This document shows positions 31,301-47,300 of a stretch of DNA of 64,000 nucleotides, piece by piece. Each line of letters opens with the position of its first letter. The stretch's first letter is position 1. This DNA is from Octopus bimaculoides (Eukaryota): contig NC_069002.1 of assembly GCF_001194135.2 (NCBI RefSeq), forward strand, positions 12,831,202 to 12,895,201. The letters are read 5' to 3'. Made by a program: the position numbers and the translations under genes. The notes beneath the pieces were generated by a model, which was not told the origin of the DNA, ran no database searches, and worked only from the letters and a program-made list of their open reading frames with translations.

Positions 31301-34158
31301 GGGACAAACACACACACACATACACATATATATATACATATATACGACGGCTTCTTTCAGTTTCCGTCTACCAAATCCACTCACAAGGCTTTGGTCGGCC
31401 TGAGGCTATTGTAGAAGACACTTGCCCAAGATACCACGCAGTGGGACTGAACCCGGGACCATGTGGTTGGTAAGCAAGCTACTTACCACACAGCCACTCC
31501 TATGTAGAAAGGATTATGTACATGTGCATATAAGACCCTGCATATTGTACTTTAAAGGCAAAATATTTTAAGAGCCTGTATATTGTATGTACTAAGGGGA
31601 TTTTAAGGGTCAAAGATGAAAATCCCTCAGTGACTTACTTCACATGAAGGTCACTAACGATCTGGTGTTGATTTACTTCCATATTCATTTGGAATGTTTG
31701 AGGCTGTTCTCTTTTAAATTGTTCCTCTTCTTTCTGTGATACTTCATTGTTTGAAGATGATGCTGGAGTCTTTTGTCTGTAGCAGTTGCTAACATTGCTG
31801 TTACAACTGTCTTCTGTGTTTGGCTTGCAATATGGGTGGTCAATAAGTGGAGAAGGGATCTCTATCAATTAGAAAAGATTAAAACAAAAACAGTGAGAAC
31901 AAAAAAAAAAAGATGAATCAATATTTTCTCTTATTGAGAAGTATTCTGTGAAAATACGTTTTGGTAAATTAATTATTGAAAACAGTACATGTACGTGAAT
32001 GAACATAGGATATTTTAACCAACAATCAGCATACAATTACACATACATATAAACAGATACAAACATATACACACACATAAACAGGCTTCTCTCAGTTTCC
32101 AACAATCAAATTTACTCTCCAGGCTTTGATGAACCTGAACTATTTTAGAAAACATTTACCCAAAGTAACATGTGACAGGATTGAACCTGAAAACACAGGG
32201 TTGTGAAGTGAATGCCTTAACTACACAGACTTGCTTCTGTTTGTTGCTATGTTTGAGCCTTAAATGTGTTGGCATTCAGTCGGATGGAAACATAACAGCA
32301 ATGTATCATTTCATCTTTTACAATTATTATTACTATCTTATATGACTCAATAATGAGTAGGGGACGTTTTGGCATCCCCGATTTTTTGTTGACTTAATTG
32401 ACACCAGACATCTTGATGTCTTTCTCTCTCCCTTCTTCCTCTACTCGTCTTCTCTCTCTATGTGAGCATATTTCTCTTCATATGTATGAGAGGGAAAAAT
32501 AATTATACTAATTGTATTAAATTAACCCTTTAGCATTTAAGCTGGCCTTTCCAGCCCAAATATTCTCCCTATTTTATGTTGAAACTGATCAGATCCTGGC
32601 AACAAGGTAATGCAAGATTAATCCAGAACAATGGGAATAAATAAGCATTATATTTGACAGAGTAACCTGAATGCTAAAGGGTTAATAAATTGTAACGTTT
32701 CTCTCTTTCTCTTTGTCTCCCTGTCTCTCATTCTTTCTATCTGTATGTGTGTATTTCTGTGTATGTGTGCTTGCTTTCAGTGCCAAAAAAGTACAGTTGT
32801 CAAAACAGGCTGAATGTCCAGTCAGCCATGTCAAACCATCTGCATCCAAGCAGCAGCACCAAATTCCGCTTAATAATCGGGTGGTGAGAGTTGATAGTGA
32901 CATAAGCAAGATTGAGACATATGTTGATCTTACCTGTTTGTTGTTTTAAGGCAAATTGAGTGGAATCATTGTTTCTTTTTCTCTTCGTGGCCTTGTGAGA
33001 AGTTAACGAGGTCTTTAGAGAATAGTCTGGTATATTGAAAAGTGTTGGTACAGCATTCCATTTCAATCTGTTCTTTGTTACTTTGTTTGAAAACTGATCA
33101 TCTTCAAAGTGGTCAGCACATATGTGACAATTGTTATTAAGATAAAGAGGACTTTTGTCGAGAATATCATCTCTACAAGTATTCTGAACCCATCGTTGGC
33201 ACCTGAAAATAACAGGAATAAAAAAAAACAACTTGTTTTTATCATCATCATTTAACATCTGTTTTCCATGCTGGCTTGGGTTGGATGGTTTGACAGGAGC
33301 TAGCAAGATAGAGGACTGCTCCAATCTCCAATATCTGCTCTGGCGTGGTTTCAATAGATAGATGTCCTTCCTAGGGCTAAACACTTCACAGAGTGTACTG
33401 AGTACATTTCTCTTTGGTGTAGCACCAGCACTAATGAAATAACTAAGTAACTCGCAAGACAAGACATCTCAATATTAAGGTAGGTGGCTTTGTGCAAGGT
33501 GATGAAGGATAGGAACAAGTATTCTGTTGTATGGGAGATACATGGTTGTGTTGGAAGAAGAGGATGTTGGTGAAGATGTATCAGGGCGTGCCTTTAAGTT
33601 ACAGGAAGGTGAACCAAAGAGAAGTGGTATGAGTAGGTAAACAAGTTCATGGGAGTATGAGAAGCAAGTGTCAGTGTAATTAGTATTTAATCTATTTATA
33701 AGTATAAATATTCTAACCCCTAAAAAAAAAAAATAAATAAAAGCTCCAAATAAATCAGATGAGGACTATAGTTTATTGAGGGGGTGTAGATGTGATTGGA
33801 CATATGCCCTTCTTTACTGTTAATTTGAAGAACACAAAATTCTTACAAAACTACCAAAATAATTGCATATAACTCAAGAATAAAAATATCTTTTAAATAC
33901 CACAGTAATTTGTCATTGGATATTTAACAGAACTTTTAACCAATTTTTTAAGATTTTAAATGCAAGAAATTTAAAAACACACATAATTTCACATCAATTA
34001 TGTTAAATTTCTGAGTGAATTTTTCTGAAGAAATTGGTTTGATCTTACCTCTCTTTATTCTTTGGGAATCTGAAGAAAGATAAATCAGGTCGCTTGGATT
34101 GACGATTGGAGCAATTAATTGCTGAACAATGATTGTGAGATAATGAATGTGAAGTCAT
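27795..34158 (-). CDS. THAP-domain zinc-finger protein (N-terminus THAP12/PRKRIR-like), 4 coding exons, about 372 aa
   Basis: Exons 34158-34049, 33202-32934, 31861-31639, 28311-27795 join in frame (1119 nt). THAP C2CH signature CSAINC...FRFP...W...CADHF...AVPTLF. The last acceptor is uncertain. Confidence 0.88.
28797..29340 (-). mobile_element. Repeat family C (retroposon 3' end with (GAT)n tail)
   Basis: catcatcgtttaacgtccgctttccatgctagc... recurs at 11530, 15355, 45640, 47105 and inverted at 54320-54505, 57430-57610. Confidence 0.75.
31109..31500 (-). mobile_element. SINE family B copy
   Basis: Reverse complement of 39087-39447. Confidence 0.85.
31639..31861 (-). CDS. THAP gene exon (EIPSPLIDHPYC...DLHVK)
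   Basis: ttgatag / gtaagt, phase 1-2; DHxY motif (HCF-binding-like, as in other THAP proteins). Confidence 0.82.
32522..32685. mobile_element. piggyBac-type MITE copy (internally deleted)
   Basis: Same TIRs. Confidence 0.8.
32934..33202 (-). CDS. THAP gene exon (CQRWVQNTCRDD...CADHF...AVPTLFNIP...KRKR)
   Basis: tattttcag / gtaaga, phase 2-1; completes the THAP domain; NLS-like KRKR. Confidence 0.92.
34049..34158 (-). CDS. THAP gene first coding exon (MTSHSLSHNHCSAINCSNRQSKRPDLSFFRFPKNKER)
   Basis: ATG at 34158, AG|gtaaga donor; probable acceptor at 34232 within the 5'UTR. Confidence 0.9.
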
Positions 34159-34619: not shown

Positions 34620-34853
34620 AATTGCCCGCTAAGATGGCCGCCGACAGCACAGCCAGCGGATACAGCAGTGGGTTGGTGGAGTTACCTACCTTCGTGAAAC
34701 ACTACCATTTTGCTGTGAACCAGCTGAATGACTTCCGGTGGAAATACGTGGCAAATCGCCTGCTGCTGCGCACGCATTGCGTCCTCACTATCGACTTCCG
34801 GTCCCTTGTTAGCCAAGATGTCAACGTGGAGCTTGTTCGATTTCAACCACAAA
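34620..34853. promoter_or_regulatory. Bidirectional promoter, THAP gene (-) / TMED gene (+)
   Basis: CpG-rich island in AT-rich DNA; ACTTCCGG (ETS/GABP) at 34731 and 34794; YY1-like AAGATGGCCG at 34631; NRF1-like TGCGCACGCA near 34767; minus-strand AAG|GTAGGT donor at 34689 marking a non-coding THAP exon 1. Confidence 0.7.
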
Positions 34854-34995
34854 ATGTTTTCCTTTCAGCACCTCCTGCTACTGATTTGCTGTTGGTGTTA
34901 TTTTGCGACTTTCTCAGATGCCTTATTTTTCCATATTAAGGAAACCGAAAAAAAATGCTTCATAGAAGAATTGCCGGACGAAACGATGGTTGTCG
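34854..34995 (+). CDS. TMED9: TMED exon 1 ([48 protein letters not shown])
   Basis: Signal peptide + start of GOLD domain, G|gtaagt donor at 34996; alternative in-frame ATG at 34818. Confidence 0.95.
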
Positions 34996-35076
34996 GTAAG
35001 TGACAGAATATCCTCTCCACCCACAACTGTGTACATGAAATATACATCCAAGCATATATATGCACACATACACACG

Positions 35077-35108
<32 letters not shown>

Positions 35109-35194
35109 AACATACGTTTTATCTTTATGTATGTGATATATATATATGTATATATACATATGTATAGACCTATATATACTTTATATGCATATAC

Positions 35195-35227
<33 letters not shown>

Positions 35228-35243
35228 CGTTTTATCTTTATGT

Positions 35244-35309
<66 letters not shown>

Positions 35310-38300
35310 CCTATATATATACTTTATATACATTATATGTGTATACACACATACATTACGTATATCTATATACTTTTATATGTGCATCTATTTATTAAAT
35401 GTATAAAGGTTGTGATATTTTGGAATGATTGATTAATAACTATACGCCTTTTCGATTTTACTCGTTTATTTTAGAAATGTTTCATACTTTATTTGTTCTT
35501 CCTTCTATAATCTGCCTCTATCTTTCCGTTCGCCTACATTTCCCCCTCTATTTTGTCCGCCCAGACTCTTGTCTATCAACATTGTCTGACTATATGTCTA
35601 CTCAGCTGTTTATCTATCTATCTATCTGTCTATCTTTCTATCTATACATATCCTGTCCCGATTTCCACATCACCTTCATTGAATATATACATGTATGTGT
35701 GTGTGTGTATATATAAATGTATGTATACACATACATTACGTACTATATATAGTGTATATATACATAGTCACATATATGTGTATTTGATACTGTTTGTGTG
35801 TATATGCAGTTACAAAAACAGACGTTTGTGTACCTGTCTTCGTCTTTTTTCTGTAAATTTGGAATATATACACACACTTATCTCTCCTTCTACACACTAC
35901 AAATGCATATATTACATTTTGTATGTGTATATGAACAGGTGTTTCTCCGTGTGTGTTTGTATAAAGATGATCTGAGTATTGTGTTTGTAATCAATCTGTT
36001 ACACCTGACAAAAATCCAGCTTGTCCAATTTATGTACAGAGGATAGGTTAGAAATAGAAGCCTGGTGCTTATTTTATTGCCCCCCCCCCCTTTGCCCAAC
36101 CGCCTAGTTAACAGGATGTAAACACAACGCCGGTTGTCAAAAGCACACAAACACATAGATACGACGGACTTCTTTCCGTGTCCGTCTACCAAATCCACTC
36201 AAGGCTTTGGTCAGCCCAAGGCTAAAGTAGAAGACACTTGCACGCAGTTGGACTGAACCCAGAATCATGTAGTTGGGAAGCAAACTTCTTACCACACAGC
36301 CACGTCTCTCTCTCTCTCTCTATATATATATATACACACGCATAAATGATCGGAAGTAGTTACACCTGTTGTTTAACCCTAGGTTAGCTCTGTGCCTCTT
36401 ATGATCATGTAGTTTTCCAACCGTGTCTTTATATCTAAAGACGGTATGAATTGAGGGAGATTTGGCTGCTCTTTTTAGTGATGTACATGTTTCCTACTGT
36501 TGTTGTTCATTCCCAAGGCGGCTCTGTTCCAGCAAATCAAAGGCATTCTAGCCATGATCATCCCGTCATATTTTTCAAACATTGTATTTTGGGCGACATT
36601 ATCTCACGTGTACATTTTTAAAGATGATTGTGTTATAGCAGATCCATGTCTTGTCGCTTTGTGACAATTGTTGTTGTGAGTGTTGTAGGGATTTTTTCTT
36701 GTCTCCACAAAGATAAACTCCCTCAGCAGTTGGAATCCACGAGTGTGGTTTCCATTTTCCCTTTCGGGGCCATTTCATTTCCATTTACTTCGCTAATGTC
36801 CTTCAAGGAGAAGAACCACATATGTTAACACAATTATAACCCGAAACCTTGTGGTCATGAAAAATATTTTAAATTCACTTATCCCCCCCCCCCCCATTTT
36901 ATGTTTCTCTTTTCTCTCTAGTCTGTTAGTGGATGTGTTATTTTGACAATTATTGTTCAGCTAACTCCTTGTTTTTGTTGTTATTGGGTTAAATTCAGAA
37001 TTTGAGGCAGACTGGGAATGGTCCACGTCGAGAGCATTTAGAACGTAGGGGGAGGAGGATGTGTGGGAGAATTCATTAAATTCAATTGTGAGGTCAGATG
37101 GAGAGAGGGAGGCGTTATGAGGACGGAAGGGTGGTGGTGGTGGTGGAGAGAGAAGTGAGAGCGTTTTGTGTTTTTTTTTCCGGTTGATAAAACCTTCCTC
37201 TTTTTCTGCACCATCCGCTGCTGCCATTATGTCTTGGGTTTAACAGTTTTCAGTTTATAAAAAAATAAGGTCGAGCTATTTACCCCCTACTCCCCTCCGC
37301 TTCTGCACGAATCGTTAGAATATCCGGAAAAAAAAAATAGTTTGCAATATTTGTCCTGGCTCTGCCAAGGTCAACTTTGCTTTTCTTCCCACCAGGGTCG
37401 ATAAAATAATGTACCAGTCAAGTACTGGGTGCGGAAATATAATCGACTCACCTCCTCCCACGGATATGAGGCTTCCGATGTCTCTGTCAGAAATAATTAC
37501 ATAGTTACACGTCAGCCCCCGATCCAGCAAGTCTACAATGAACAGTATTCCAGCCCAGCTGTGACAGTCTCCTCTCTTAGTCAGATATATTGCATCTAGG
37601 ATTTTATTTTCAAATATATATATATATTTTTTTGTTCCTATTTCCAGCCTCTTGTTGTCATGTTTTATAAATAGAAAGTTATTAGTTAAACAGATTTGCA
37701 ACATTAATTCCATTGAGATAAGCATTAGTAAATGTAAATTTCGGCTGCGAATTTGAATGGGGGAACATAGTCTTGGTTCAACTCCTGTTCCACAGAAACC
37801 GAAATCTACCCGTGATCCGCAAGTAACTTTCTTGGACAGATCCGGAGTTCTTCATCCTTCCGGTGCTTTACACTTCAGCGCTTTATATTTGTGTTTAACC
37901 TATGCGTTGTGGGTTCTCTATATATTAGTAAATGGAAACCCATCGGTTTCGACAACGAACAACATTCACTCCGATCAGCTGAACTTGATTTCATTGCGTG
38001 TACTTGTAACTTTTTGCCTGTTCTAACCAGTTTCATAAGTTTGTCCTAAACGTCCATACTTGTTTACAGACTTTTATAGTCAGCCCTTGTTTCATTCTGA
38101 GTAATATAAAACTTTCCTTCCGTAAGCCCCAAGTTACTCTGGTGAGTGAAAAAAAAAAAAGAAGGAATATTGGGAATGTGTATCAGATATGATGCCGGGC
38201 AAATATGGTTTGTGTATCACATAGGATACACAGCAGGAGAGACAAAAAAAAGGGTAGTATACATTTTCAGCTAGAATCAACGTGATACTATTATGATACA

Positions 38301-41300
38301 GGTTAGACCTTTCACTTGGATTTTCAATCCATCCGAAGGGCTTCCAATCTGTTTTCATCTGTGCAGTGGAATCATACCGAAAAACTAGTGATTACAAAAC
38401 GAATTTCCTTATCGTTCGTCTACTGCAATCAGTCTCCAAGGCCTTTCTACAGAATGGTTATGAGGTCAATCTTTCACCGAAATACGCTATTTAAAATGGA
38501 AAGCAATAATATAATTTGTTCTTTTGGTTTAGATTAACCATTTACAAATTACGCCCCTTTGGTAGTGTCAATGGTGTTGGTGAAATCCCACGCCCATGTT
38601 TTTTTTTTTTAATGTGCAATTTTATGAGTTTTATGAGCCATCACAACACCTGTCTAATTAGTTGAGCTCTATTGTAGTTCCTTGTTTAGCTTCTTATTCA
38701 TTCATTCACAATCTGGTAAGACTGCCTTCGCGTCAGAGCTGGTACTTGACTGACTGGTCGCTAGTTGGACGAGAGAGGGGAAAGTAAAAGTGAATTAACG
38801 GCTACAGGCCAGAACAATTAAGTAGCTGATTTATTTCAGATGATGCCGCTTTACGAACGTAATGGTCGTACTAATCGTTTAGGTCACTCCTCTTCGAACT
38901 GACAATGTTAACCAATTGTTTCTTTTCTTTTAGTCGCGTAATAAAGATTACGTTATATTTGTGTGTGTTAAACTGTAGGGTACGATTTGGTTGCTCTTTC
39001 TAGTTAGTCGAACGAGCAACCACGTAGAAACTCGTTTACTGGGTGATATTAGCAGTGTTGGGAATGGTGTATTTAGAAACGACCAAGTGGTTGTGTGGTA
39101 AGTAGCTTGCTTACCAACCACATGGTTCTGGGTTCAGTCCCACTGCGTGGCACCTTGGGCAAGTGTCTTCTATTATAGCCTCGAACTGACCAAAGCCTTG
39201 TGCGTGGATTTGGTAGACGGAAACTGAAAGAAGCCCGTCGTATATATGTATGTGTGTCTGTGTTTGTCACCCCAACATCGCTTGACAACCGATGCTGGTG
39301 TGTTTACGTCCCCGTAACTTAGCGGTTCGGCAAAAGAGACCGATAGAATAAGTACTAGGTTTATAGAGAATAAGTCCTGGGTCGATTTGCTCGACTAAAG
39401 GCGGTGCTCCAGCATGGCCACAGTCAAATGAGTGAAGCAAGTAAAAGAGTAATAGCAAAAGTGAGTGGAGGAGCTTTGATGGCAAAAACATATTCTTGCC
39501 TTTTATAATAGCATATGCTTTGAATAGTCCATTGTTTGGGTTAGTTCATTTTTTTGTGTATAATGTTTTTGACTTCTGGTGCAGTAATAATAATAAGGAA
39601 TGCTTAATCCAAAACATTGACGGTCCAAATTCATGTGACAAAACCATTGTCAGTAAACTATTCCAAAACAGGCAGCAGTGGCATGGCTTTTTTGTTTTTG
39701 TTGTTATACTCAAGATTCTGACCTTTCTGACACCCATGAAATCTTGGTAAAGTGATCTTGAGTGTAAAGGGTTTATTAGCCTGGGTCCTAAACTGATAAA
39801 ACTATGACAAAGGAGGAGAAAAGTATACAAGAAGTGAGCAAACTCTTGTCAACGTGGACTTCTAACATATTTAGAGCAATGAACCATGCCTGTTCTTTTT
39901 ATTATTGATTAAGAACAGCTCAGCTATTTCCTGTGGCAACTGTATTGATTTTTAGTCAAATGAACAACCATTTCCTTCTTGTTTAGTTTCCTAAGTAGGT
40001 CGGCTCTTTTTATTTATGCGCCCTTCTAAAGCCTAACCAGGCTCATGGGCCCGGTTTCTATGGTGTATGTGTTCCCCCCAGCTGGACGGGACACCAGTCC
40101 ATCACAGCGTTACTCAAGAAACAGGAAGAGAGAGTGAGAGAAAGTTAGGGCAAAAGAGTACAACAGGGGTTGCCACCATCCCCTGCTGGAGCCTCGTGGA
40201 GCTTTAGGTGTTTTCGCTCAATAAACACACACAACGCCCGGTCTGGGAATCGAAACCGCGATCCTCCAACCGCAAGTCCGCTGCCCTAACCACTAGGCCA
40301 TTGCACTTCCTCATGTTGGCTCTAATTGGAGTAAAAAAAACATTTAATATGAAAGAAAAGAGAAAAGCAAAAGAGTTTTATGATTTGGCTGACACAAATC
40401 TTGTTGCTGAATTTCAGCAAAACCACTGATGTGTATTACTGTCTCCTTACATGATAGTTGTAAACAAGTGTCTCCATCATGCAAGTGGTGTCCTTCATTT
40501 CTAATTTTCAGTGAAGACATGTCTAGCTATGAGGAAATATTATCTTGTTTGGAAACAAGTGAGTGGTGGTGACAGGAAGAGCATCCAACTGCAGAAAAAT
40601 ACACTTTAACAAATTCTGTCCAACCCATGCAAATATGGAAATGTGGACAGTAAAACAATGGTGTGTGTGTGTATCATCATCATTTAACATCCATTTTCAA
40701 TGATGGCATGTGCTGGATAGTTTGACAAGAGCTGGTCAGCTGGGGAACAGTCCAGTTTCCAATTGTCATTTTTGGCATGGTTTCTACAGCTAGATGCCCT
40801 TCCTAATGCCAGCCACCTTACAATGTGCTGGGTGTTTTGTACATGCCACTGGCATCGGTGCATTTATGCAACACCAGCATGAGTGCATTTTATGCGGCAC
40901 AGGCACAAGTGCATTTTATGTTTTACATCATCATCATCATTTAATGTCCGTTTTCCATGCTGGACGGTTTGACTGAAAACTAGTTGGCTGGGGAGCTGCA
41001 CCAGGTTCCAATTTAATTTGGTACAGTTTCTATAGCTGGATGTGCTTCCAAACACCAACTGCTCAAAGAGTGTAGTGGGTGCTTTTAACATGCCAGTTAT
41101 GAAACACTGGCATCAGCCATAACTACGTCACTTGGCTCGACAGGTCTTAAGCACAATATATTGCCAAAGGTCTCGGTCACTTGTCACCGCCTCAATGAGG
41201 CCCAAAGTTCGAAGGGTACTTTTTACGTGCCATTGGCATGGGAGCCAGTTACACGACACTGGCATATACATGTGTGTGTATATGTATATATATATAATAT

Positions 41301-44269
41301 ATATAGATAGATAGATAGATATACATACATATACATACATATACACATGTATTTGGTTGCATCACTGAGTTCAAATCCATTCAATGTCAGTTTTGCCCTT
41401 TCATCCTCCTGGAGTTGAACTTTCTTAGTACTTTAAGTTGTATTTAAATATGGGGGGGTTGATGTTATCAATTGTTCTCCTTCCTCTAAGGTGTTTGGTC
41501 CTATCTTTATGTAATAAATTATTATTAAACCTGGTAAGCTGACAGAATTGTCACTATGCTGGACAAAATGTTTAGTGGCATTTCATCAATCTTTACATTC
41601 TTTGTGCAAATTCCACCGAGGTCCTTTTGGGGCTGATGAAGTAAGTACCAGTCGAGCACTGGGGTCAATGTAATTGACAAGCTCCCCTCTCCCAAAATTT
41701 CAGGCCTTGTACCTATAACAGAAAAGGGATTTTTATTATTTCTGTGATTAAATAAACCAGTTTTACTGTTTACTGCAACCATCCTTATTAGTTTGTACCA
41801 CTATATTGTGAAATAAGAGACCAGTGTGTGTTGTGTTCATGTGTGTGTATCTTCTTGTATGAGTGTATGTGCATGTATTGGTATGTGTATGTTTGTGTGT
41901 ATTTACATTTGTTTCACTGCAGTTTAACATGTAGCTTTCCCAGGTATATATGAAGGGGTCCCCAAAAGTAACCGGAAACATTTTCTGTGGGACAAGCTCA
42001 TTGTAGTTCAGACTTCCACTGCTAGGAGCCACTTGATGTGACCCTCAGGCATCAGTCTGCCAAATGGCGTTGTCCAGTGAGGTTATACTGCCATCTAGTG
42101 TGTCTTTTTGCAGTGCTTCTCCCCTGTTCGGTGATTTTTGCAATGGCTGAAACAAAGGAACAATGTGCTTCTGTGGGGAAAACGGCAGCTGAAATAGTTA
42201 TCAAGCTTCAAACAGCTTACAAGGATGCTGCTGCCATGAGCAAAAACACAAGTTTACGAGTGGTTCTCAGGATTTAGGAATGGTCACGTGTCGCTTGAGG
42301 ACCAACCTTGTTCATGGTGACCGTTGACCTCTTGAACAAATGAAAACATCATGATAATTCATGAACTGATCTTGGAGGACCGTCACCAAGCAATTGACAA
42401 ACTTGTTGATATGACTGATGTGTCCTGGAGCTCCTGCCAACGAATTTTGAGCAAGGAATTGCGAACGAAATGAGTTGCAGCAAAATTTGTGTCTTGCTTG
42501 CTCACAGAAGATCAAAAGCAGNNNNNNNNNNNNNTGAAAGACCAGTTGGACGTTGATCAGGACCTTTTTTTTTTTTTGAAGGTCATCATTGGTGATGAAA
42601 GCTGCTGCTATGGAATTTGCAGATGTGGAAGAGGTGGAGGAGTTAAAAGGCATCACTTTGCAAGAATTCCAGTACTGCTTCCAACAGTGGAAAACGTGTC
42701 TGAACTGATGCATTGCTTCAAATGGGGGAATGCTTTGAAGGCGATAGAAGTGTAAACACGTAAAACTAAGTGAATGAAATAACATTGCAAAATTCCGGTT
42801 TCTTTTGGGTACCCACTCGTACATATATTGGTTGTTTTGAATTGATTAGGACATGTAATATGATTGATTTTCACCCATTTTCAGGCAAGTATAAAGTTGA
42901 GATTTTTGACAAGAATGTAAATAAATATGTACCAACCGTTCATGGGTTGGGCATACACGTTGAAGTGAAAGATCCTGAAGACAAAGTTGTTCTGTCAAGG
43001 GTAAGACTTTATGAAGTAATATTGTTTTTGTTGCTTTGTTAGCCTCTTTCAACAGGTAATGCTCATCTGTAACGTAGACAAGACACTCATTTAGGTCCCT
43101 TTCAGTTTACTGCTGGCAAAACCCTCAATGTTTATTACTGCTGTTGCAAATATGGTTCCTAATTGACAACTCTGTAATTTGTTAATTAGACAAGGATTAT
43201 TATTCATTTTGGTTTTTAACTTCTACACTGACATAAAAAGAAATATGTTAGATGATAGGTTTTTGCATTTAAACTTAAAGCAAAAACTGAAGGGTATGGT
43301 GATTAAATGAGACAAGTTCCACCCCTTCTCGTTAAGGGTTAGTTGGCATACTTATGGAATTCCCAGATATGTCTTTGGGCAAAGATAAACTTGTTCCTGG
43401 TCTCATTTATGTTGGAGCCATTCATCTGACAGTTTAACAATTTTTACACTCTCCATCATCATTAACCCCTGGACATTACTGTCCTGAGTCTAAGGACTCA
43501 TAGGGCCAGTTCCCTAGTTTCCATGGTGTATAAGTGACCGAGACCATGAGATTCTCTTTCAACAAGAACGCTAGTCCATTGTAGGGTTATCCATTTTCAG
43601 CTGAGTGAACTGGAGAAATATGAAATGAAGTGTTTTACTCAAGAACACAACACGCTGACCAGGTTGGGAATGAAAGCCATGATTTTGTAATGTCCTAACC
43701 GGTAAGCTATGTGCCTTTAATTCAACTTCAATAAAATTGCTCCAGATCACTTTGTCTTTTCATCTCCTCATATATACCATCTAAACACCACCCAGCCATC
43801 TGCCAAAATTTCAACATCTACAGATCATAATAGGTGCAGTGTTAACTCACCAACCATGCAACAAACTCATTTAGGCAGGAAACTTACCAAATATCCACTC
43901 ACCCTGACTGAAAAAAATCTCTCTTTCTNNNNNNNNNNNNNNNNNNNNNNNNNNNNNNNNNNNNNNNNNNNNNNNNNNNNNNNNNNNNNNNNNNNNNNNN
44001 NNNNNNNNNNNNNNNNNNNNNNNNNNNNNNNNNNNNNNNNNNNNNNNNNNNNNNNNNNNNNNNNNNNNNNNNNNNNNNNNNNNNNNNNNNNNNNNNNNNN
44101 NNNNNNNNNTTTATAAAATTATATTTAAAAGCCAAAATGAAAAAAAAAACAAAAACCTTATTTGTTAAATCAAGAAACACCAGCACTGTTCTTTAATTTT
44201 CATCACTGATTTGTCTATTTTTTCCAGCAGCTATCTCATACCTCCCCCCCCCACACATACATGCATGCA

Positions 44270-44310
<41 letters not shown>

Positions 44311-47300
44311 TGTTGTGTGTATATTGATGGTTTTGTGTGAATGTGTTTGTTACATACAAGTAGTCCTCAAGACTCCCTTGTTCAATTTTTGCACTCCTGT
44401 AAATTTCAAAAGCCCAAGGAGGAAAAAAACTAAACAGTCAAATCTTGAGGACTGCCTGTGGTTGTTTACTCCATTAATAACAGATTGAAATCTAACAATG
44501 ATTCTTTTCAGACTGTCTTGTCTATGTCTTTTTTATTTTTTTTATTTTTATTATTTTATTATATACTAACTACATTCCAGCTATCACCATCATTGGGCTA
44601 CCAGCACCTCTCTCTAGAGTTATTCACTGACTTACATAACATATTTCATTTTGTTTCTACAACTGGTTCCTTGCAGGCAAATACAAAGTACAAGTTTATG
44701 ACTACGCTGTCAAGGATTACATGCCCCCCGTACAGGATATCGGAATGCATGTAGAAGTGAAAGGCCCAGACGATAACGTTGTTCTCTCAAGGGTGAGTTC
44801 TTGTGACAAGGGGAAGTCATCAATTTTTTCGAAGGTGTTCTCTAGTAATTGGTCTCTTAAGAATGGTTTTTTTCCCTCTGTTGCATTATTTCACTGAATT
44901 AGGAAGCACTAGATGACCATATCAGGGAATTGCTCTTGCATGGCCTTAGCTGTTATGGCTAAAATGAACAAAATTTCTTCTTCGTTTAATAGCCAAAAAA
45001 CAAATTTTTCATTTTTCTGTGTCAATATTTTAATATTGACACAACATTTCTGGTCTTTTTCTTTTAGTTTCCAATATTTCTTAGTTTTGTCAAGCATTTT
45101 TTAAAATGGATTTTGTGGTTTTATTGTTTTATTTATTTTTTTTTTTTTTCCCTTTATTGACACTGGTTTTACAGGTCTGTAAATTTTTATCTTATAGTTG
45201 GTTTCTCTTCTCCTTTGTATTGATAAATAGGACCGATACCTAGTGTCCCTATTTGGTTCTACTGAGACAAGTAGAATAAATGATATGTAAATGTGTGTGT
45301 GAGAGAGAGAGAGAGAGAGATTTGTCATACTCCACAATTCTACTTACTGTTGGTTATAACAAAGATAAAAAGTATGAGGTTCACATCTCTATATTATTTG
45401 TTACTGTGGTCTAGATACAGTTCATCTGTTGTAAACCTGGTCCTATTCATAATGTAGACTTATATTTAGGAATCACCATCGCAAAAGATGATTGATTTTG
45501 TTTTGACTCCTCACATTCTCAATTCAAACCCTACCGAAGCTAACTCTTTGGCCTTCATCCCTCCATAATCAATAAAATACCAACCAAGTACTGAGGTCGA
45601 TGCAATTGACCCACTCCCTCCATTTCAGGCCTTGTACGTCGTCGTCGTCGTTTAACATCCGCTTTCCATGCTAGCATGGGTTGGACGATTTGACTGAGGA
45701 CTGGTGAAACCAGATGGCTACACCAGGCTCCAATCTGATCTGGCAGAGTTTCTACAGCTGGATGCCCTTCCTAACGCCAACCACTCAGAGTGTAGTGGGT
45801 GCTTTTACGTGCCACCCGCACGAAGGCCAGTCAGGCGGTACTGGCAATGGCCACGCTCAAAATGGTGTATTTTATGTGCCACCTGCACAAGAGCCAGTCC
45901 AGGGGCACTGGCAAAAACTATTATCATCATCATGGTAAGGCTGCTAGCTGGCAGAATTGTTAGCATGCCAGACAAAATGCTTAGCAACATTTCGTCTGTC
46001 TTTATGTTTTAAGTTCAAATTCTGCCAAGGTTAACTTTGCCTTTCATCCTTTCAGAGTCAGTAAAATAAGTACCAATTGAGCACTGGGGTTGATGTAATC
46101 AACTTACCCTGCTCCCACAAAATTGCCAACCTTGTGCCAAAATATGAAACTATTATTATTATCTGCTTATACTGGCAACTGTGATACATTAGGGGCAGAG
46201 GAGGGAGGTGACAGTTTTTTGTTGGCTTAAATACTTCCAAAAGAAGACTAATGTTGTTAATCCTCACTATATCTTCTGCTATCTTTTGTTGTGTATATTT
46301 TAAGGCCAACCTCAGTAAATTTACAAATGTATGCTCAATAATAAAAAATTAGTTCCTAGCTGCCATCCATATTCTTCTGATGTTTCTACAATTTTCTTCA
46401 CTTAATTCTTTCAGTTTGAGTGGTAAAATGTTATGTCATGTGTTCTTTATTCAGGGTTAAACATTGATATTCAGGAACAGTATTAGACCTGAAGTAGTTT
46501 ATCTTCTCCCTCTGTCACTTTCCCCCTGTCTTACTGTTGGTTGTACATTCTGATTTAGTTTGTAGTGATGGATCTCTGAAGGTAATGTTAGTGAGGTACA
46601 TTCCTGCTCTTTACTCAATAGAACTATCCCCTACTTATTGTAAGAGATTCCATATTCCACAGACAATTGTACCCTTAATATTTGGCAGGTTCAGCATGAT
46701 ACTGTGACAGGAATTGGCCCTTTGAATTGCAGGTACACTCCACCTAACAAGGACTATGGTAGAAGGCACTGCCCAAAGTAGAGCTGTGTAGGATAAATCT
46801 AGAGACCACACGATTGTGAAACAAAATTCATCATCATTCAATCACATGTCTATGCTCCCTTATTTGATGAAATTGGGGTATTATTGAGCATTGTGGTAGT
46901 TAGCATGTATCTTTGATGTTAATGAAATATGGGGCAAATGTTAGCTTTCATACTCACCTGGAGACGACAAGGGTAAATAGCTAAATACCTTCACTGAGAT
47001 TCTGTGTTTATGGACTTGCAGGCTGATCCATCCGAAGCCGGTTTGGAAAGATGAAACAAAAGAAAAATCTTAACCTAAAACCAAAGTGATTAAAACAATT
47101 CCATCATCATCATCATCATCGTTGTCGTTTAACGTCTGCTTTCCATGCTAGCATGGGTTGGAGGATTTGACTGAGGACTGGTGGACCAGGAGGCGACACC
47201 AGGCTCCAATCTGATTTGGCAGAGTTTCTACAGCTGGATGCCCTTCCTAACGCCAAGTCCATGTTGGTGACAATAAAACTTAGAAGTAATATGAGACCAA

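What the first reader, a model, noticed from the sequence alone, without database searches (positions are those of the whole stretch)
42885..44792. Mutually exclusive duplicated GOLD-domain exon in the p24-alpha (TMED9/4) cargo receptor
Seen: two intact 116-nt exons with identical phase (1-0) and canonical splice sites encode the same 39-aa GOLD segment at 23/39 identity. Many conserved residues use different synonymous codons, which suggests an old duplication with both copies under purifying selection. Including both frameshifts to TAG at 44752-44754; skipping both gives G-AC TTA TGC TGC TGA. Only one-exon products are productive. 2A keeps the canonical [15 protein letters not shown] pattern, while 2B changes it (DY, QDIG, KGPDDN). 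Established: the GOLD domain is the lumenal p24 part implicated in cargo and p24-partner binding. Inference: one gene makes two ER-Golgi cargo receptors with different specificity or oligomer partners. This could parallel the vertebrate TMED4/TMED9 gene split. I know of no description of this arrangement but could not search.
Basis: partly seen in the sequence, partly recalled or inferred. Interest (0 to 1): 0.88.

Follow-up and report, generated by a model that had tools for sequence, protein, structure and literature searches.

The report
Alternative GOLD-domain exon pair, octopus p24
The octopus gene for an ER-Golgi cargo receptor (p24-alpha) carries two interchangeable copies of one exon, conserved across molluscs for over half a billion years, but both products are already in public annotations and the design is a well-known kind of splicing.

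Summary
The window is Octopus bimaculoides. Its p24-alpha gene (eca/TMED4/9-like, 34818-58119, + strand) has two 116-nt exons, 2A (42885-43000) and 2B (44677-44792). They share phase and AG/GT sites and are 23/39 aa and 79/116 nt identical.

The assembly gap lies inside the intron between them. Gap-free O. vulgaris and O. sinensis loci are collinear across it, with the same exon order.

Both exons are under strong purifying selection (dN/dS 0.01-0.06 against Argonauta, synonymous sites saturated). Using both or neither gives premature stops more than 230 nt upstream of the last junction.

The pair occurs in that order in octopods; a cuttlefish gene model holds both exons in that order. RefSeq or GenBank isoforms that differ only in this segment exist for bivalves, gastropods and a chiton. 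A similar pair is seen in a nemertean and two annelids, but not in Lingula, Priapulus or amphioxus.

Both octopus isoforms are already in RefSeq and UniProt (XP_014786959.1, XP_014786960.1). I found no paper describing them.

This is a real, ancient, tandem-duplicated mutually exclusive exon pair, a new member of a known kind. Any functional difference between the isoforms is untested. "2A canonical, 2B derived" holds only for octopod-specific changes.

The parts
34818..34995 (+). Exon 1 (coding part): start codon, signal peptide, GOLD strands beta1-beta2 and the first Cys of the disulfide. Ends GTC G|gtaagt, phase 1.
   Evidence: tblastn and reading of the sequence. The assembled protein is letter-for-letter XP_014786959.1 / XP_014786960.1. 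One search used 34998 by mistake, adding 3 nt in frame; the true end is 34995.
42885..43000 (+). Exon 2A, 116 nt, A-type alternative exon (residues 60-98).
   Evidence: AG/GT boundaries. Peptide is 100% identical in O. vulgaris and O. sinensis and 79% in Argonauta. dN/dS is 0.04-0.06 against Argonauta. Present in RefSeq isoform X1.
43001..44676 (+). Intron between 2A and 2B (1676 nt), holding the assembly gap 43929-44109. About 60-90 nt after 2A (43001-43089) is conserved with Argonauta.
   Evidence: Collinear with gap-free congeners; the missing piece is 169-187 bp. Conserved flank seen. Too long for steric hindrance.
44644..44676 (+). Conserved 3' splice region of 2B (TTTTGTTTCTACAACTGGTTCCTTGCAG), nearly identical in Argonauta.
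44677..44792 (+). Exon 2B, 116 nt, B-type alternative exon (residues 60-98).
   Evidence: AG/GT boundaries. Peptide is 100% identical in O. vulgaris and O. sinensis, 95% in Argonauta and 90% in a decapodiform mRNA contig. dN/dS is 0.01-0.04. Present in RefSeq isoform X2.
44793..44853 (+). Conserved intronic flank downstream of 2B (GTGAGTTCTTGTGACAAGGGGA...AAGGTG).
   Evidence: 81% identity to Argonauta across 44644-44853, including this flank. Its function is unknown.
55934..56038 (+). Exon 3 (constant): rest of the GOLD domain with the second Cys. Single copy.
56213..56359 (+). Exon 4 (constant): last GOLD strand and the coiled coil. Single copy in octopods.
57970..58119 (+). Exon 5 (constant): end of the coiled coil, transmembrane helix, FFEAKKLV tail and TAA stop. 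Single copy in octopods.

Best explanation
Exons 2A and 2B are a tandem-duplicated pair of mutually exclusive alternative exons in the single p24-alpha gene (eca/TMED4/9 orthologue) of Octopus bimaculoides. Each productive mRNA carries one of them.

The gene therefore makes two 231-residue type I membrane proteins. They are identical except for 16 of the 39 residues 60-98. In the models this stretch forms the end of GOLD strand beta3, the next three strands and their loops.

Shown: in octopus the one-or-the-other outcome is enforced at least by the reading frame. Because 116 nt is 2 mod 3, using both or neither creates a premature stop far upstream of the last junction. Inferred: such mRNAs are removed by nonsense-mediated decay.

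The choice between the exons is presumably made by splicing regulators that act on the conserved intron flanks. This is inferred and not shown.

The duplication predates the split of chitons, gastropods, bivalves and cephalopods. It may go back to the common ancestor of molluscs, annelids and nemerteans.

Across molluscs, the residues that distinguish the two types all lie at positions 65-81. These include E/Q65, K versus Y/H/F at 69, N/K72, V versus M/L at 75, T versus S/V/P at 77, and L/I81. The most likely role is therefore to present two alternative versions of one patch of the lumenal GOLD domain, changing what that patch binds. The partner could be cargo, another p24 subunit or a factor such as Tango1. 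This last step is inference.
For: Anatomy and frames:
- The gap is harmless and the exon order is confirmed in two gap-free congeners.

The same pair in relatives:
- Argonauta has 2A then 2B, 845 nt apart.
- A Sepia gene model holds both exons in that order.

Selection:
- dS is about 2 while dN is 0.03-0.12 for both exons against Argonauta and a decapodiform mRNA.

Products:
- Both exact proteins are in RefSeq, UniProt and GenBank for three Octopus species.
- A spliced exon 1-2B-3-4-5 contig exists.
- Other transcript-sized contigs carry A-type or mollusc B-type segments.

Other molluscs:
- Pairs of proteins annotated on one contig or assembly (RefSeq isoforms or GenBank gene models) that differ only in this segment exist in Mercenaria, Mytilus, Sinanodonta, Biomphalaria and Liolophura. 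In Babylonia and Physella the listed pair also differs in the last exon.
- Each mollusc exon is closer to the same type in other classes (0.58-0.73) than to the other type in other species (0.42-0.59). In eight of nine species it is also closer than to its own partner (0.46-0.69); Babylonia is the exception.
- Type-specific positions are confined to residues 65-81.

Fold:
- AlphaFold2 gives the same strand pattern, with block-mean pLDDT 80-92 over residues 61-100, for both isoforms.
- The isoform B model matches p24 GOLD crystal structures, with TM 0.71 to 5azw.

Other phyla:
- Lineus, Owenia and Capitella have two exon-2 copies with AG/GT sites. The lengths are all 2 mod 3 and the order is A then B.
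Against: - No RNA-seq junction counts for O. bimaculoides could be made here. The ratio, the tissue pattern and strict exclusivity are not shown for this species.
- RefSeq X1/X2 are models, and I could not see their read support.
- No functional difference between the isoforms is known.
- The one mapped TMED9 cargo contact that I found, the beta2 edge at E52, lies in constant exon 1 (PMC11414720).
- In Drosophila, oligomerisation is attributed mainly to the coiled coil (PMC10932740).
- B exons of the nemertean and the annelids show no clear affinity to mollusc B exons (0.38-0.52 against 0.34-0.54). Bootstrap support for a mollusc-B clade on 41 columns is only 6%. A single origin beyond molluscs is therefore not established.
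- No conserved RNA pairing that could steer the choice was found within 80 nt of the exons.
Confidence: 0.85

Rival explanations
1. Assembly artefact. Exon 2A sits on a 1.4-kb contig bounded by gaps on both sides and could be a misplaced piece of another p24 paralogue or a haplotype copy.
For: 2A lies between the gaps at 42522-42534 and 43929-44109.
Against: Gap-free chromosome-scale loci of O. vulgaris and O. sinensis, and the Argonauta locus, have the same 2A-then-2B order. The alignments are collinear across both gap positions. At 68% nt identity, with saturated synonymous sites, the two copies are not allelic.
Confidence: 0.01
2. One copy is a dead or decaying pseudo-exon that is rarely or never used, so the gene in effect makes one protein.
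For: No junction reads for this species were available to me.
Against: Both copies keep AG/GT sites and open frames, with dN/dS of 0.01-0.06 over saturated synonymous divergence. 2B is the better conserved copy in cephalopods, at 95% against 79% to Argonauta. 2B occurs in a spliced mRNA contig. 2A is the exon in the Argonauta protein model and in RefSeq X1. Both types persist across mollusc classes.
Confidence: 0.03
3. The pair is kept for regulation rather than for two protein activities. One version: each exon serves a different tissue or stage through its own splicing control while the proteins are interchangeable. Another version: double inclusion or double skipping is used as unproductive splicing to set dosage.
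For: Intron flanks of both exons are conserved to Argonauta. Both non-productive patterns would be decay targets. No isoform-specific biochemical role is known.
Against: Seven to nine positions (65-81) are fixed differently in A and B types across mollusc classes, with changes of chemistry such as K to aromatic and N to K. This is hard to explain if the proteins were interchangeable.
Confidence: 0.1
4. The exon-2 pairs of annelids and nemerteans arose independently of the mollusc pair. Recurrent duplication of the same exon, rather than one lophotrochozoan event.
For: Their B exons are no closer to mollusc B than to mollusc A. The same gene shows other, lineage-restricted duplications: exon 4 in Capitella and Lamellibrachia, the last exon in some molluscs, and a recent partial copy in Priapulus. 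Lingula has a single exon 2.
Against: The order is the same, A-like copy upstream, in all three phyla. Lineus B shares the YD..AKDY motif with mollusc B. All single-copy lophotrochozoans sampled keep the A-like form, which fits loss of B.
Confidence: 0.4

Closest known systems
Tandem exon duplication-derived mutually exclusive exons (catalogued for human genes in PMC8373072; the class includes tropomyosins, actinins, syntaxins)
   Same: Adjacent homologous exons of equal length and phase, with one used per mRNA. They are very old and under purifying selection, and they swap part of a folded domain without changing the fold.
   Different: This one is in a p24 cargo-receptor gene. It appears restricted to molluscs, annelids and nemerteans. 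Amphioxus has one exon here. TMED did not co-occur with the human catalogue paper in the full-text searches.
Vertebrate TMED4 / TMED9 (two p24-alpha genes)
   Same: Two alpha-type p24 proteins in one organism. Human TMED9 is the best solved relative, at E=6.5e-99.
   Different: They are whole-gene paralogues that differ along their whole length and have their own promoters (the TMED4 sequence is from my own knowledge). Here only residues 60-98 differ and one promoter serves both. The two events are independent, because deuterostome sequences lie outside both exon types.
Alternative splicing of Tmed2 (p24-beta) in vertebrate striated muscle
   Same: A p24 family gene whose product is changed by regulated alternative splicing (PMC5840707).
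   Different: It is in a different subfamily. As far as I recall it is a small cassette exon, not a duplicated exon pair (this is from my own knowledge and was not checked).
Docking-site/selector RNA pairing clusters (Dscam, 14-3-3 xi, MRP1 in insects)
   Same: Choice of one exon from tandem duplicates.
   Different: No significant or conserved duplex was found between the 80-nt flanks of 2A and 2B in three octopods. There are only two variants. The frame rule alone explains why only one-exon products survive.
Steric-hindrance exon pairs (alpha-tropomyosin exons 2/3 type)
   Same: In Capitella the two exon-2 copies are 45 nt apart and the two exon-4 copies 36 nt apart, which is probably too short to be spliced out as an intron (the length limit is from my own knowledge).
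   Different: In octopods the spacer is 845-1829 nt, so this mechanism cannot apply to the window.

Membership tests
p24/TMED family, alpha subfamily | emp24/GP25L/GOLD profile match over the lumenal and membrane parts | tested here: met
   PF01105 at E=1.3e-56 (isoform A) and 6.3e-57 (isoform B), covering residues 35-226.
p24/TMED family, alpha subfamily | Closest to alpha members rather than beta, gamma or delta | tested here: met
   PDB chains: TMED9 6.5e-99, TMED10 2.3e-25, TMED2 9.2e-16, TMED5 2.4e-05. Database relatives are named eca / TMED4 / TMED9.
p24/TMED family, alpha subfamily | Signal peptide, GOLD beta-sandwich with a Cys pair, coiled coil, one TM helix, and a short tail with FF and KKxx signals | tested here: met
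   The sequence ends ...FFEAKKLV. C47 and C119 are invariant in 75- and 74-sequence alignments. The models show eight strands and then a long helix. The GOLD part matches 5azw, 5azx, 5gu5 and 7rrm. Signal-peptide cleavage was not computed.
Mutually exclusive exons from tandem exon duplication | Neighbouring exons are homologous, with the same length, phase and splice-site type | tested here: met
   116/116 nt, phase 1 to 0, AG/GT, 23/39 aa, E=1.7e-13.
Mutually exclusive exons from tandem exon duplication | Mature mRNAs contain exactly one of the two | tested here: inconclusive
   The annotated proteins each hold one. One spliced decapodiform contig holds 2B only. Both-in and both-out are out of frame. 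Junction reads for O. bimaculoides could not be counted with these tools.
Mutually exclusive exons from tandem exon duplication | Both copies conserved in orthologues under purifying selection | tested here: met
Docking/selector RNA-pairing MXE clusters | Conserved complementary intronic elements that pair one variant exon with a docking site | tested here: not met
   RNAduplex on the 80-nt flanks in three octopods gave z between -2.5 and +1.4, and none was reproduced across species. Only flanks were tested; distant elements in the 8-kb and 11-kb introns were not.
Steric-hindrance MXE pairs | The intron between the two exons is too short to be spliced | tested here: not met
   1676 nt in the window, 1784-1829 nt in congeners and 845 nt in Argonauta. 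It is met in Capitella at 45 nt.
U2/U12 incompatibility MXE pairs | One flanking intron with U12-type splice sites | tested here: not met
   The 5' sites are gtaagt, gtaaga and gtgagt, and all 3' sites end in cag. None resembles the U12 consensus (the consensus is from my own knowledge).

The most novel reading that the evidence does not exclude
In lophotrochozoans the single p24-alpha gene may diversify by exon duplication instead of gene duplication, module by module. One pair of GOLD-domain exons dates to the common ancestor of molluscs, annelids and nemerteans. A pair of coiled-coil exons (exon 4) occurs in annelids. A pair of transmembrane and tail exons occurs in some bivalves and gastropods. 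Under this reading, the type-specific residues 65-81 of the exon-2 pair mark a so far unrecognised specificity-determining patch on the alpha-p24 GOLD domain, kept in two states for over 500 million years.
Probability: 0.35. Interest if true: 0.55.

Novelty: new member of a known kind. Interest (0 to 1): 0.35.

Why it matters
What p24 GOLD domains bind, and with which surface, is still poorly defined. Here evolution has held two versions of one 17-residue stretch (65-81) of an alpha-p24 GOLD domain apart since before the mollusc classes diverged, while everything else in the protein is shared. This points to a specific patch to test for cargo or partner selectivity. It also offers a clean natural pair for pull-downs and swaps.

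The finding adds a trafficking-receptor example to the short list of very old invertebrate-only alternative exon pairs. It also shows that gene models in several annelids and a cuttlefish mis-handle it, either by missing one exon or by stringing both together.

It does not change any general picture. Both octopus isoforms were already annotated, and the mechanism is standard.

Tried and rejected
- Misassembly or paralogue piece: rejected by collinear gap-free loci.
- A third exon-2 copy hidden in the gap or in the long introns: none found in the window or in gap-free O. vulgaris, O. sinensis or Argonauta, even at permissive E-values.
- Duplicates of exons 1, 3, 4 or 5 in octopods, as seen in annelids and other molluscs: none.
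- RNA docking/selector pairing near the exons: no reproducible signal.
- A blastn search for conserved intronic islands against Argonauta was swamped by simple repeats. Only the exon flanks stood out.
- The bootstrap NJ tree of the 39-41 residue segment was too short to resolve deep nodes, with mollusc-B monophyly at 6%. I relied on the identity tables instead.
- Look-ups of the isoform proteins in transcriptome-type assemblies for Octopus returned only the genome records. Mercenaria P0006 was not on record.
- Five literature searches for a description of a p24/TMED mutually exclusive exon found nothing relevant. No paper for the TMED9/2/5/10 heterotetramer entries 21gl/21gm was in the library. 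I therefore could not place residues 65-81 relative to the partner subunits.
- The suspected mariner remnant upstream of 2A gave no Pfam hit.

Full report
**What is in the window.** It located six coding pieces on the + strand. Reading the flanks gave the following gene model:

| Exon | Coordinates | Notes |
|---|---|---|
| 1 | 34818-34995 | ATG to GTC G\|gtaagt |
| 2A | 42885-43000 | alternative |
| 2B | 44677-44792 | alternative |
| 3 | 55934-56038 | constant |
| 4 | 56213-56359 | constant |
| 5 | 57970-58119 | TAA stop |

The two proteins built with 2A or with 2B are letter-for-letter XP_014786959.1 (isoform X1, with 2A) and XP_014786960.1 (isoform X2, with 2B) of Octopus bimaculoides. They are also UniProt A0A0L8FU33 and A0A0L8FTW4. 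The gene is on CM046622.1 of GCA_001194135.2. Both proteins match Pfam PF01105 (E about 1e-56). Human TMED9 is by far their best solved relative (E=6.5e-99), so this is a p24-alpha.

**The observation.** Both exons are 116 nt, bounded by cag| and |gt, in the same phase. They are 23/39 aa and 79/116 nt identical, with a reciprocal E-value of 1.7e-13 in the window. Between the copies, synonymous sites are close to saturation (dS 1.7) while dN is 0.28. Using both exons gives TAG at 44752-44754. Using neither gives TGA at 55945-55947. These stops lie 290 and 238 nt upstream of the last exon junction.

**The gap.** The N run at 43929-44109 is inside the 1676-nt intron between the exons. Exon 2A in fact lies on a 1394-bp contig with a second, 13-N gap on its left (42522-42534). 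Misplacement was therefore a real possibility.
- The orthologous loci of O. vulgaris (L001) and O. sinensis (L002) have no gaps.
- They carry 2A then 2B about 1.8 kb apart with identical peptides.
- They align collinearly across both gap positions.
- The stretch missing from the window is 187 and 169 bp there.
- No third copy exists in any of these loci.

**Conservation in cephalopods.**
- Argonauta hians has 2A and 2B 845 nt apart.
- A Sepia pharaonis gene model contains both exons, wrongly strung together.
- A 1166-nt JGI metatranscriptome contig (L004) is a spliced exon 1-2B-3-4-5 mRNA of a decapodiform cephalopod.
- Octopus against Argonauta gives 16-18 synonymous and 2.5-10 non-synonymous differences per exon. 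This is dN/dS 0.01-0.06, and 2B is the more constrained copy.
- Intron sequence is conserved only next to the exons. This covers about 60-90 nt after 2A, 33 nt before 2B (including the polypyrimidine and branch region), and 60 nt after 2B.

**Beyond cephalopods.** The protein search returned, for many molluscs, pairs of proteins annotated on the same contig or assembly (RefSeq isoforms or GenBank models) that differ only in this segment:
- Mercenaria (P0010/P0006)
- Mytilus (P0019/P0007)
- Sinanodonta (P0017/P0009)
- Biomphalaria (P0031/P0016)
- the chiton Liolophura (P0045/P0015)

In Babylonia and Physella the listed A- and B-type isoforms also differ in the last exon.

Each mollusc exon is more like the same type in other classes (A-A 0.58-0.73, B-B 0.62-0.69) than like the other type in other species (0.42-0.59). 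In eight of nine species it is also more like the same type than like its own partner (0.46-0.69); Babylonia is the exception. The duplication therefore predates the mollusc classes.

The residues that separate the types are 65, 66, 69, 72, 75, 77 and 81, and nearly 67 and 78-79. Residues 82-98 are shared.

At the DNA level, all three non-mollusc species below have two AG/GT-bounded copies, A-like first, with lengths that are 2 mod 3:

| Species | Phylum | Spacer between copies |
|---|---|---|
| Lineus longissimus | Nemertea | 1230 nt |
| Owenia fusiformis | Annelida | 2443 nt |
| Capitella teleta | Annelida | 45 nt |

Lingula has one exon 2. Priapulus and amphioxus have one exon that is fused with exon 3. 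The non-mollusc B exons show no clear affinity to mollusc B. Whether there was one origin or several outside molluscs stays open.

**Which copy is 'canonical'.** Single-copy exons of ecdysozoans are slightly closer to mollusc B (0.56-0.67) than to mollusc A (0.51-0.60); deuterostomes and rotifers are about equidistant. The G-I-G of 2B, not the G-L-G of 2A, is the common state outside lophotrochozoans. What is peculiar to octopus 2B is Q79-D80, shared with other cephalopods (D80 also in planorbid and physid snails), and G89/N93, which are octopod-only. The decapodiform 2B keeps KDPDDK.

**Structure.** AlphaFold2 models of both isoforms give the same elements. Block-mean pLDDT over residues 61-100 is 80-92 (isoform A) and 89-92 (isoform B). 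In the models:
- Exon 2 supplies the second half of strand 56-68, a short strand at 73-76, strand 83-88 and strand 94-100, with their loops.
- The type-specific positions sit in 65-81.
- The isoform B model matches p24 GOLD crystal structures, with 5azw at TM 0.71.

The disulfide cysteines (C47, C119) and the beta2 edge are in constant exons. In TMED9 that edge binds the misfolded MUC1-fs cargo through E52 (PMC11414720). The alternative segment therefore changes a different part of the domain. The GOLD domain was disordered in the TMED9 oligomer maps. I could not read coordinates of the heterotetramer entries 21gl/21gm.

**Mechanism of exclusivity.** Steric hindrance is excluded in octopods, where the spacer is 845-1829 nt. 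No U12-type sites are present. No reproducible RNA duplex links the 80-nt flanks. What is shown is the frame rule. Decay of the out-of-frame forms is inferred from the position of the stops. In Capitella the 45-nt spacer would add steric exclusion. The same holds for its two in-frame exon-4 copies, which are 36 nt apart.

**Novelty.** Five full-text searches found no description of a mutually exclusive or duplicated exon in any p24/TMED gene. The class itself is well known and often ancient (PMC8373072). The isoforms are already in RefSeq and UniProt. I therefore rate this as a new member of a known kind. It is solid but of moderate interest. Its value lies in the pointer to residues 65-81 as a candidate specificity patch.

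Noticed in passing
L011 (Capitella teleta KB309099.1) 2592-2710 and 3515-3661: The single annotated protein on record for this gene (P0043, found) uses 2A and 4A only; two further exon copies are not in it. A second exon 2 (119 nt) lies only 45 nt after 2A. A second, in-frame exon 4 (147 nt, coiled coil, 37% identical) lies 36 nt after 4A. Both have AG/GT sites. The spacers look too short to splice, so these would be steric-hindrance pairs.
   Followed up: partly
Protein P0004 (Lamellibrachia satsuma, 264 aa): The gene model strings two divergent exon-4 copies one after the other ([11 protein letters not shown]... then RVHLNISSGEE...). This is probably a mis-joined alternative pair like that of Capitella.
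   Followed up: partly
Proteins P0049 (Mercenaria X3), P0084 (Babylonia X3), P0095 (Physella X3): These RefSeq isoforms swap the last exon (end of the coiled coil, TM helix, cytosolic tail) for a divergent copy, for example ...FWWSVGQTGALILIGLLQVRHLKKFFISKKLV. This is a second duplicated-exon site in the same gene. No such copy is found in the window or in O. vulgaris, O. sinensis or Argonauta within the sequence held.
   Followed up: partly
L009 (Priapulus caudatus) 2370-2423: A recent partial tandem copy of the 3' splice site plus the first 54 nt of exon 2 (GNCKVQVYDRNVNDYLPT) lies 146 nt upstream of the real exon. It is truncated and is not an alternative exon pair. Exons 2 and 3 are fused in Priapulus and in amphioxus (L010).
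   Followed up: partly
window 42560-42770 (+), intron 1, next to the 13-N gap: Frameshifted stretch that reads ..[11 protein letters not shown].. and ..[16 protein letters not shown] / [14 protein letters not shown]... From memory it resembles the ends of a mariner/Tc1 transposase with an internal deletion. Pfam gave no hit, so this is unconfirmed.
   Followed up: partly
window 32800-33462 (-): Open reading frame with a THAP zinc-finger domain (PF05485, E=6.6e-11). It is the divergently oriented upstream neighbour of the p24 gene. The same neighbour is found in O. vulgaris, O. sinensis and Argonauta.
   Followed up: partly
Protein P0012 (Saccostrea echinata isoform X2, 242 aa): This model contains all of 2A followed in frame by the last two thirds of 2B (DYLPSAPGVGMLVEVKDPEGGIVLSR). 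It is either an annotation artefact or use of an internal 3' splice site in 2B.
   Followed up: no
Protein P0124 (Sepia/Acanthosepion pharaonis CAE1313773.1, 384 aa): The cuttlefish gene model includes both 2A and 2B joined by a spurious linker, and has a false N-terminus. The deposited annotation of this gene is wrong there.
   Followed up: no
window 44240-44310, 35020-35420, 41250-41350, 50000-50100: Long (TA)n/(CA)n-type simple repeats fill much of the introns. They also border several assembly gaps in the window (for example 22731-23177 and 24205-24648). They swamped the cross-species blastn.
   Followed up: no
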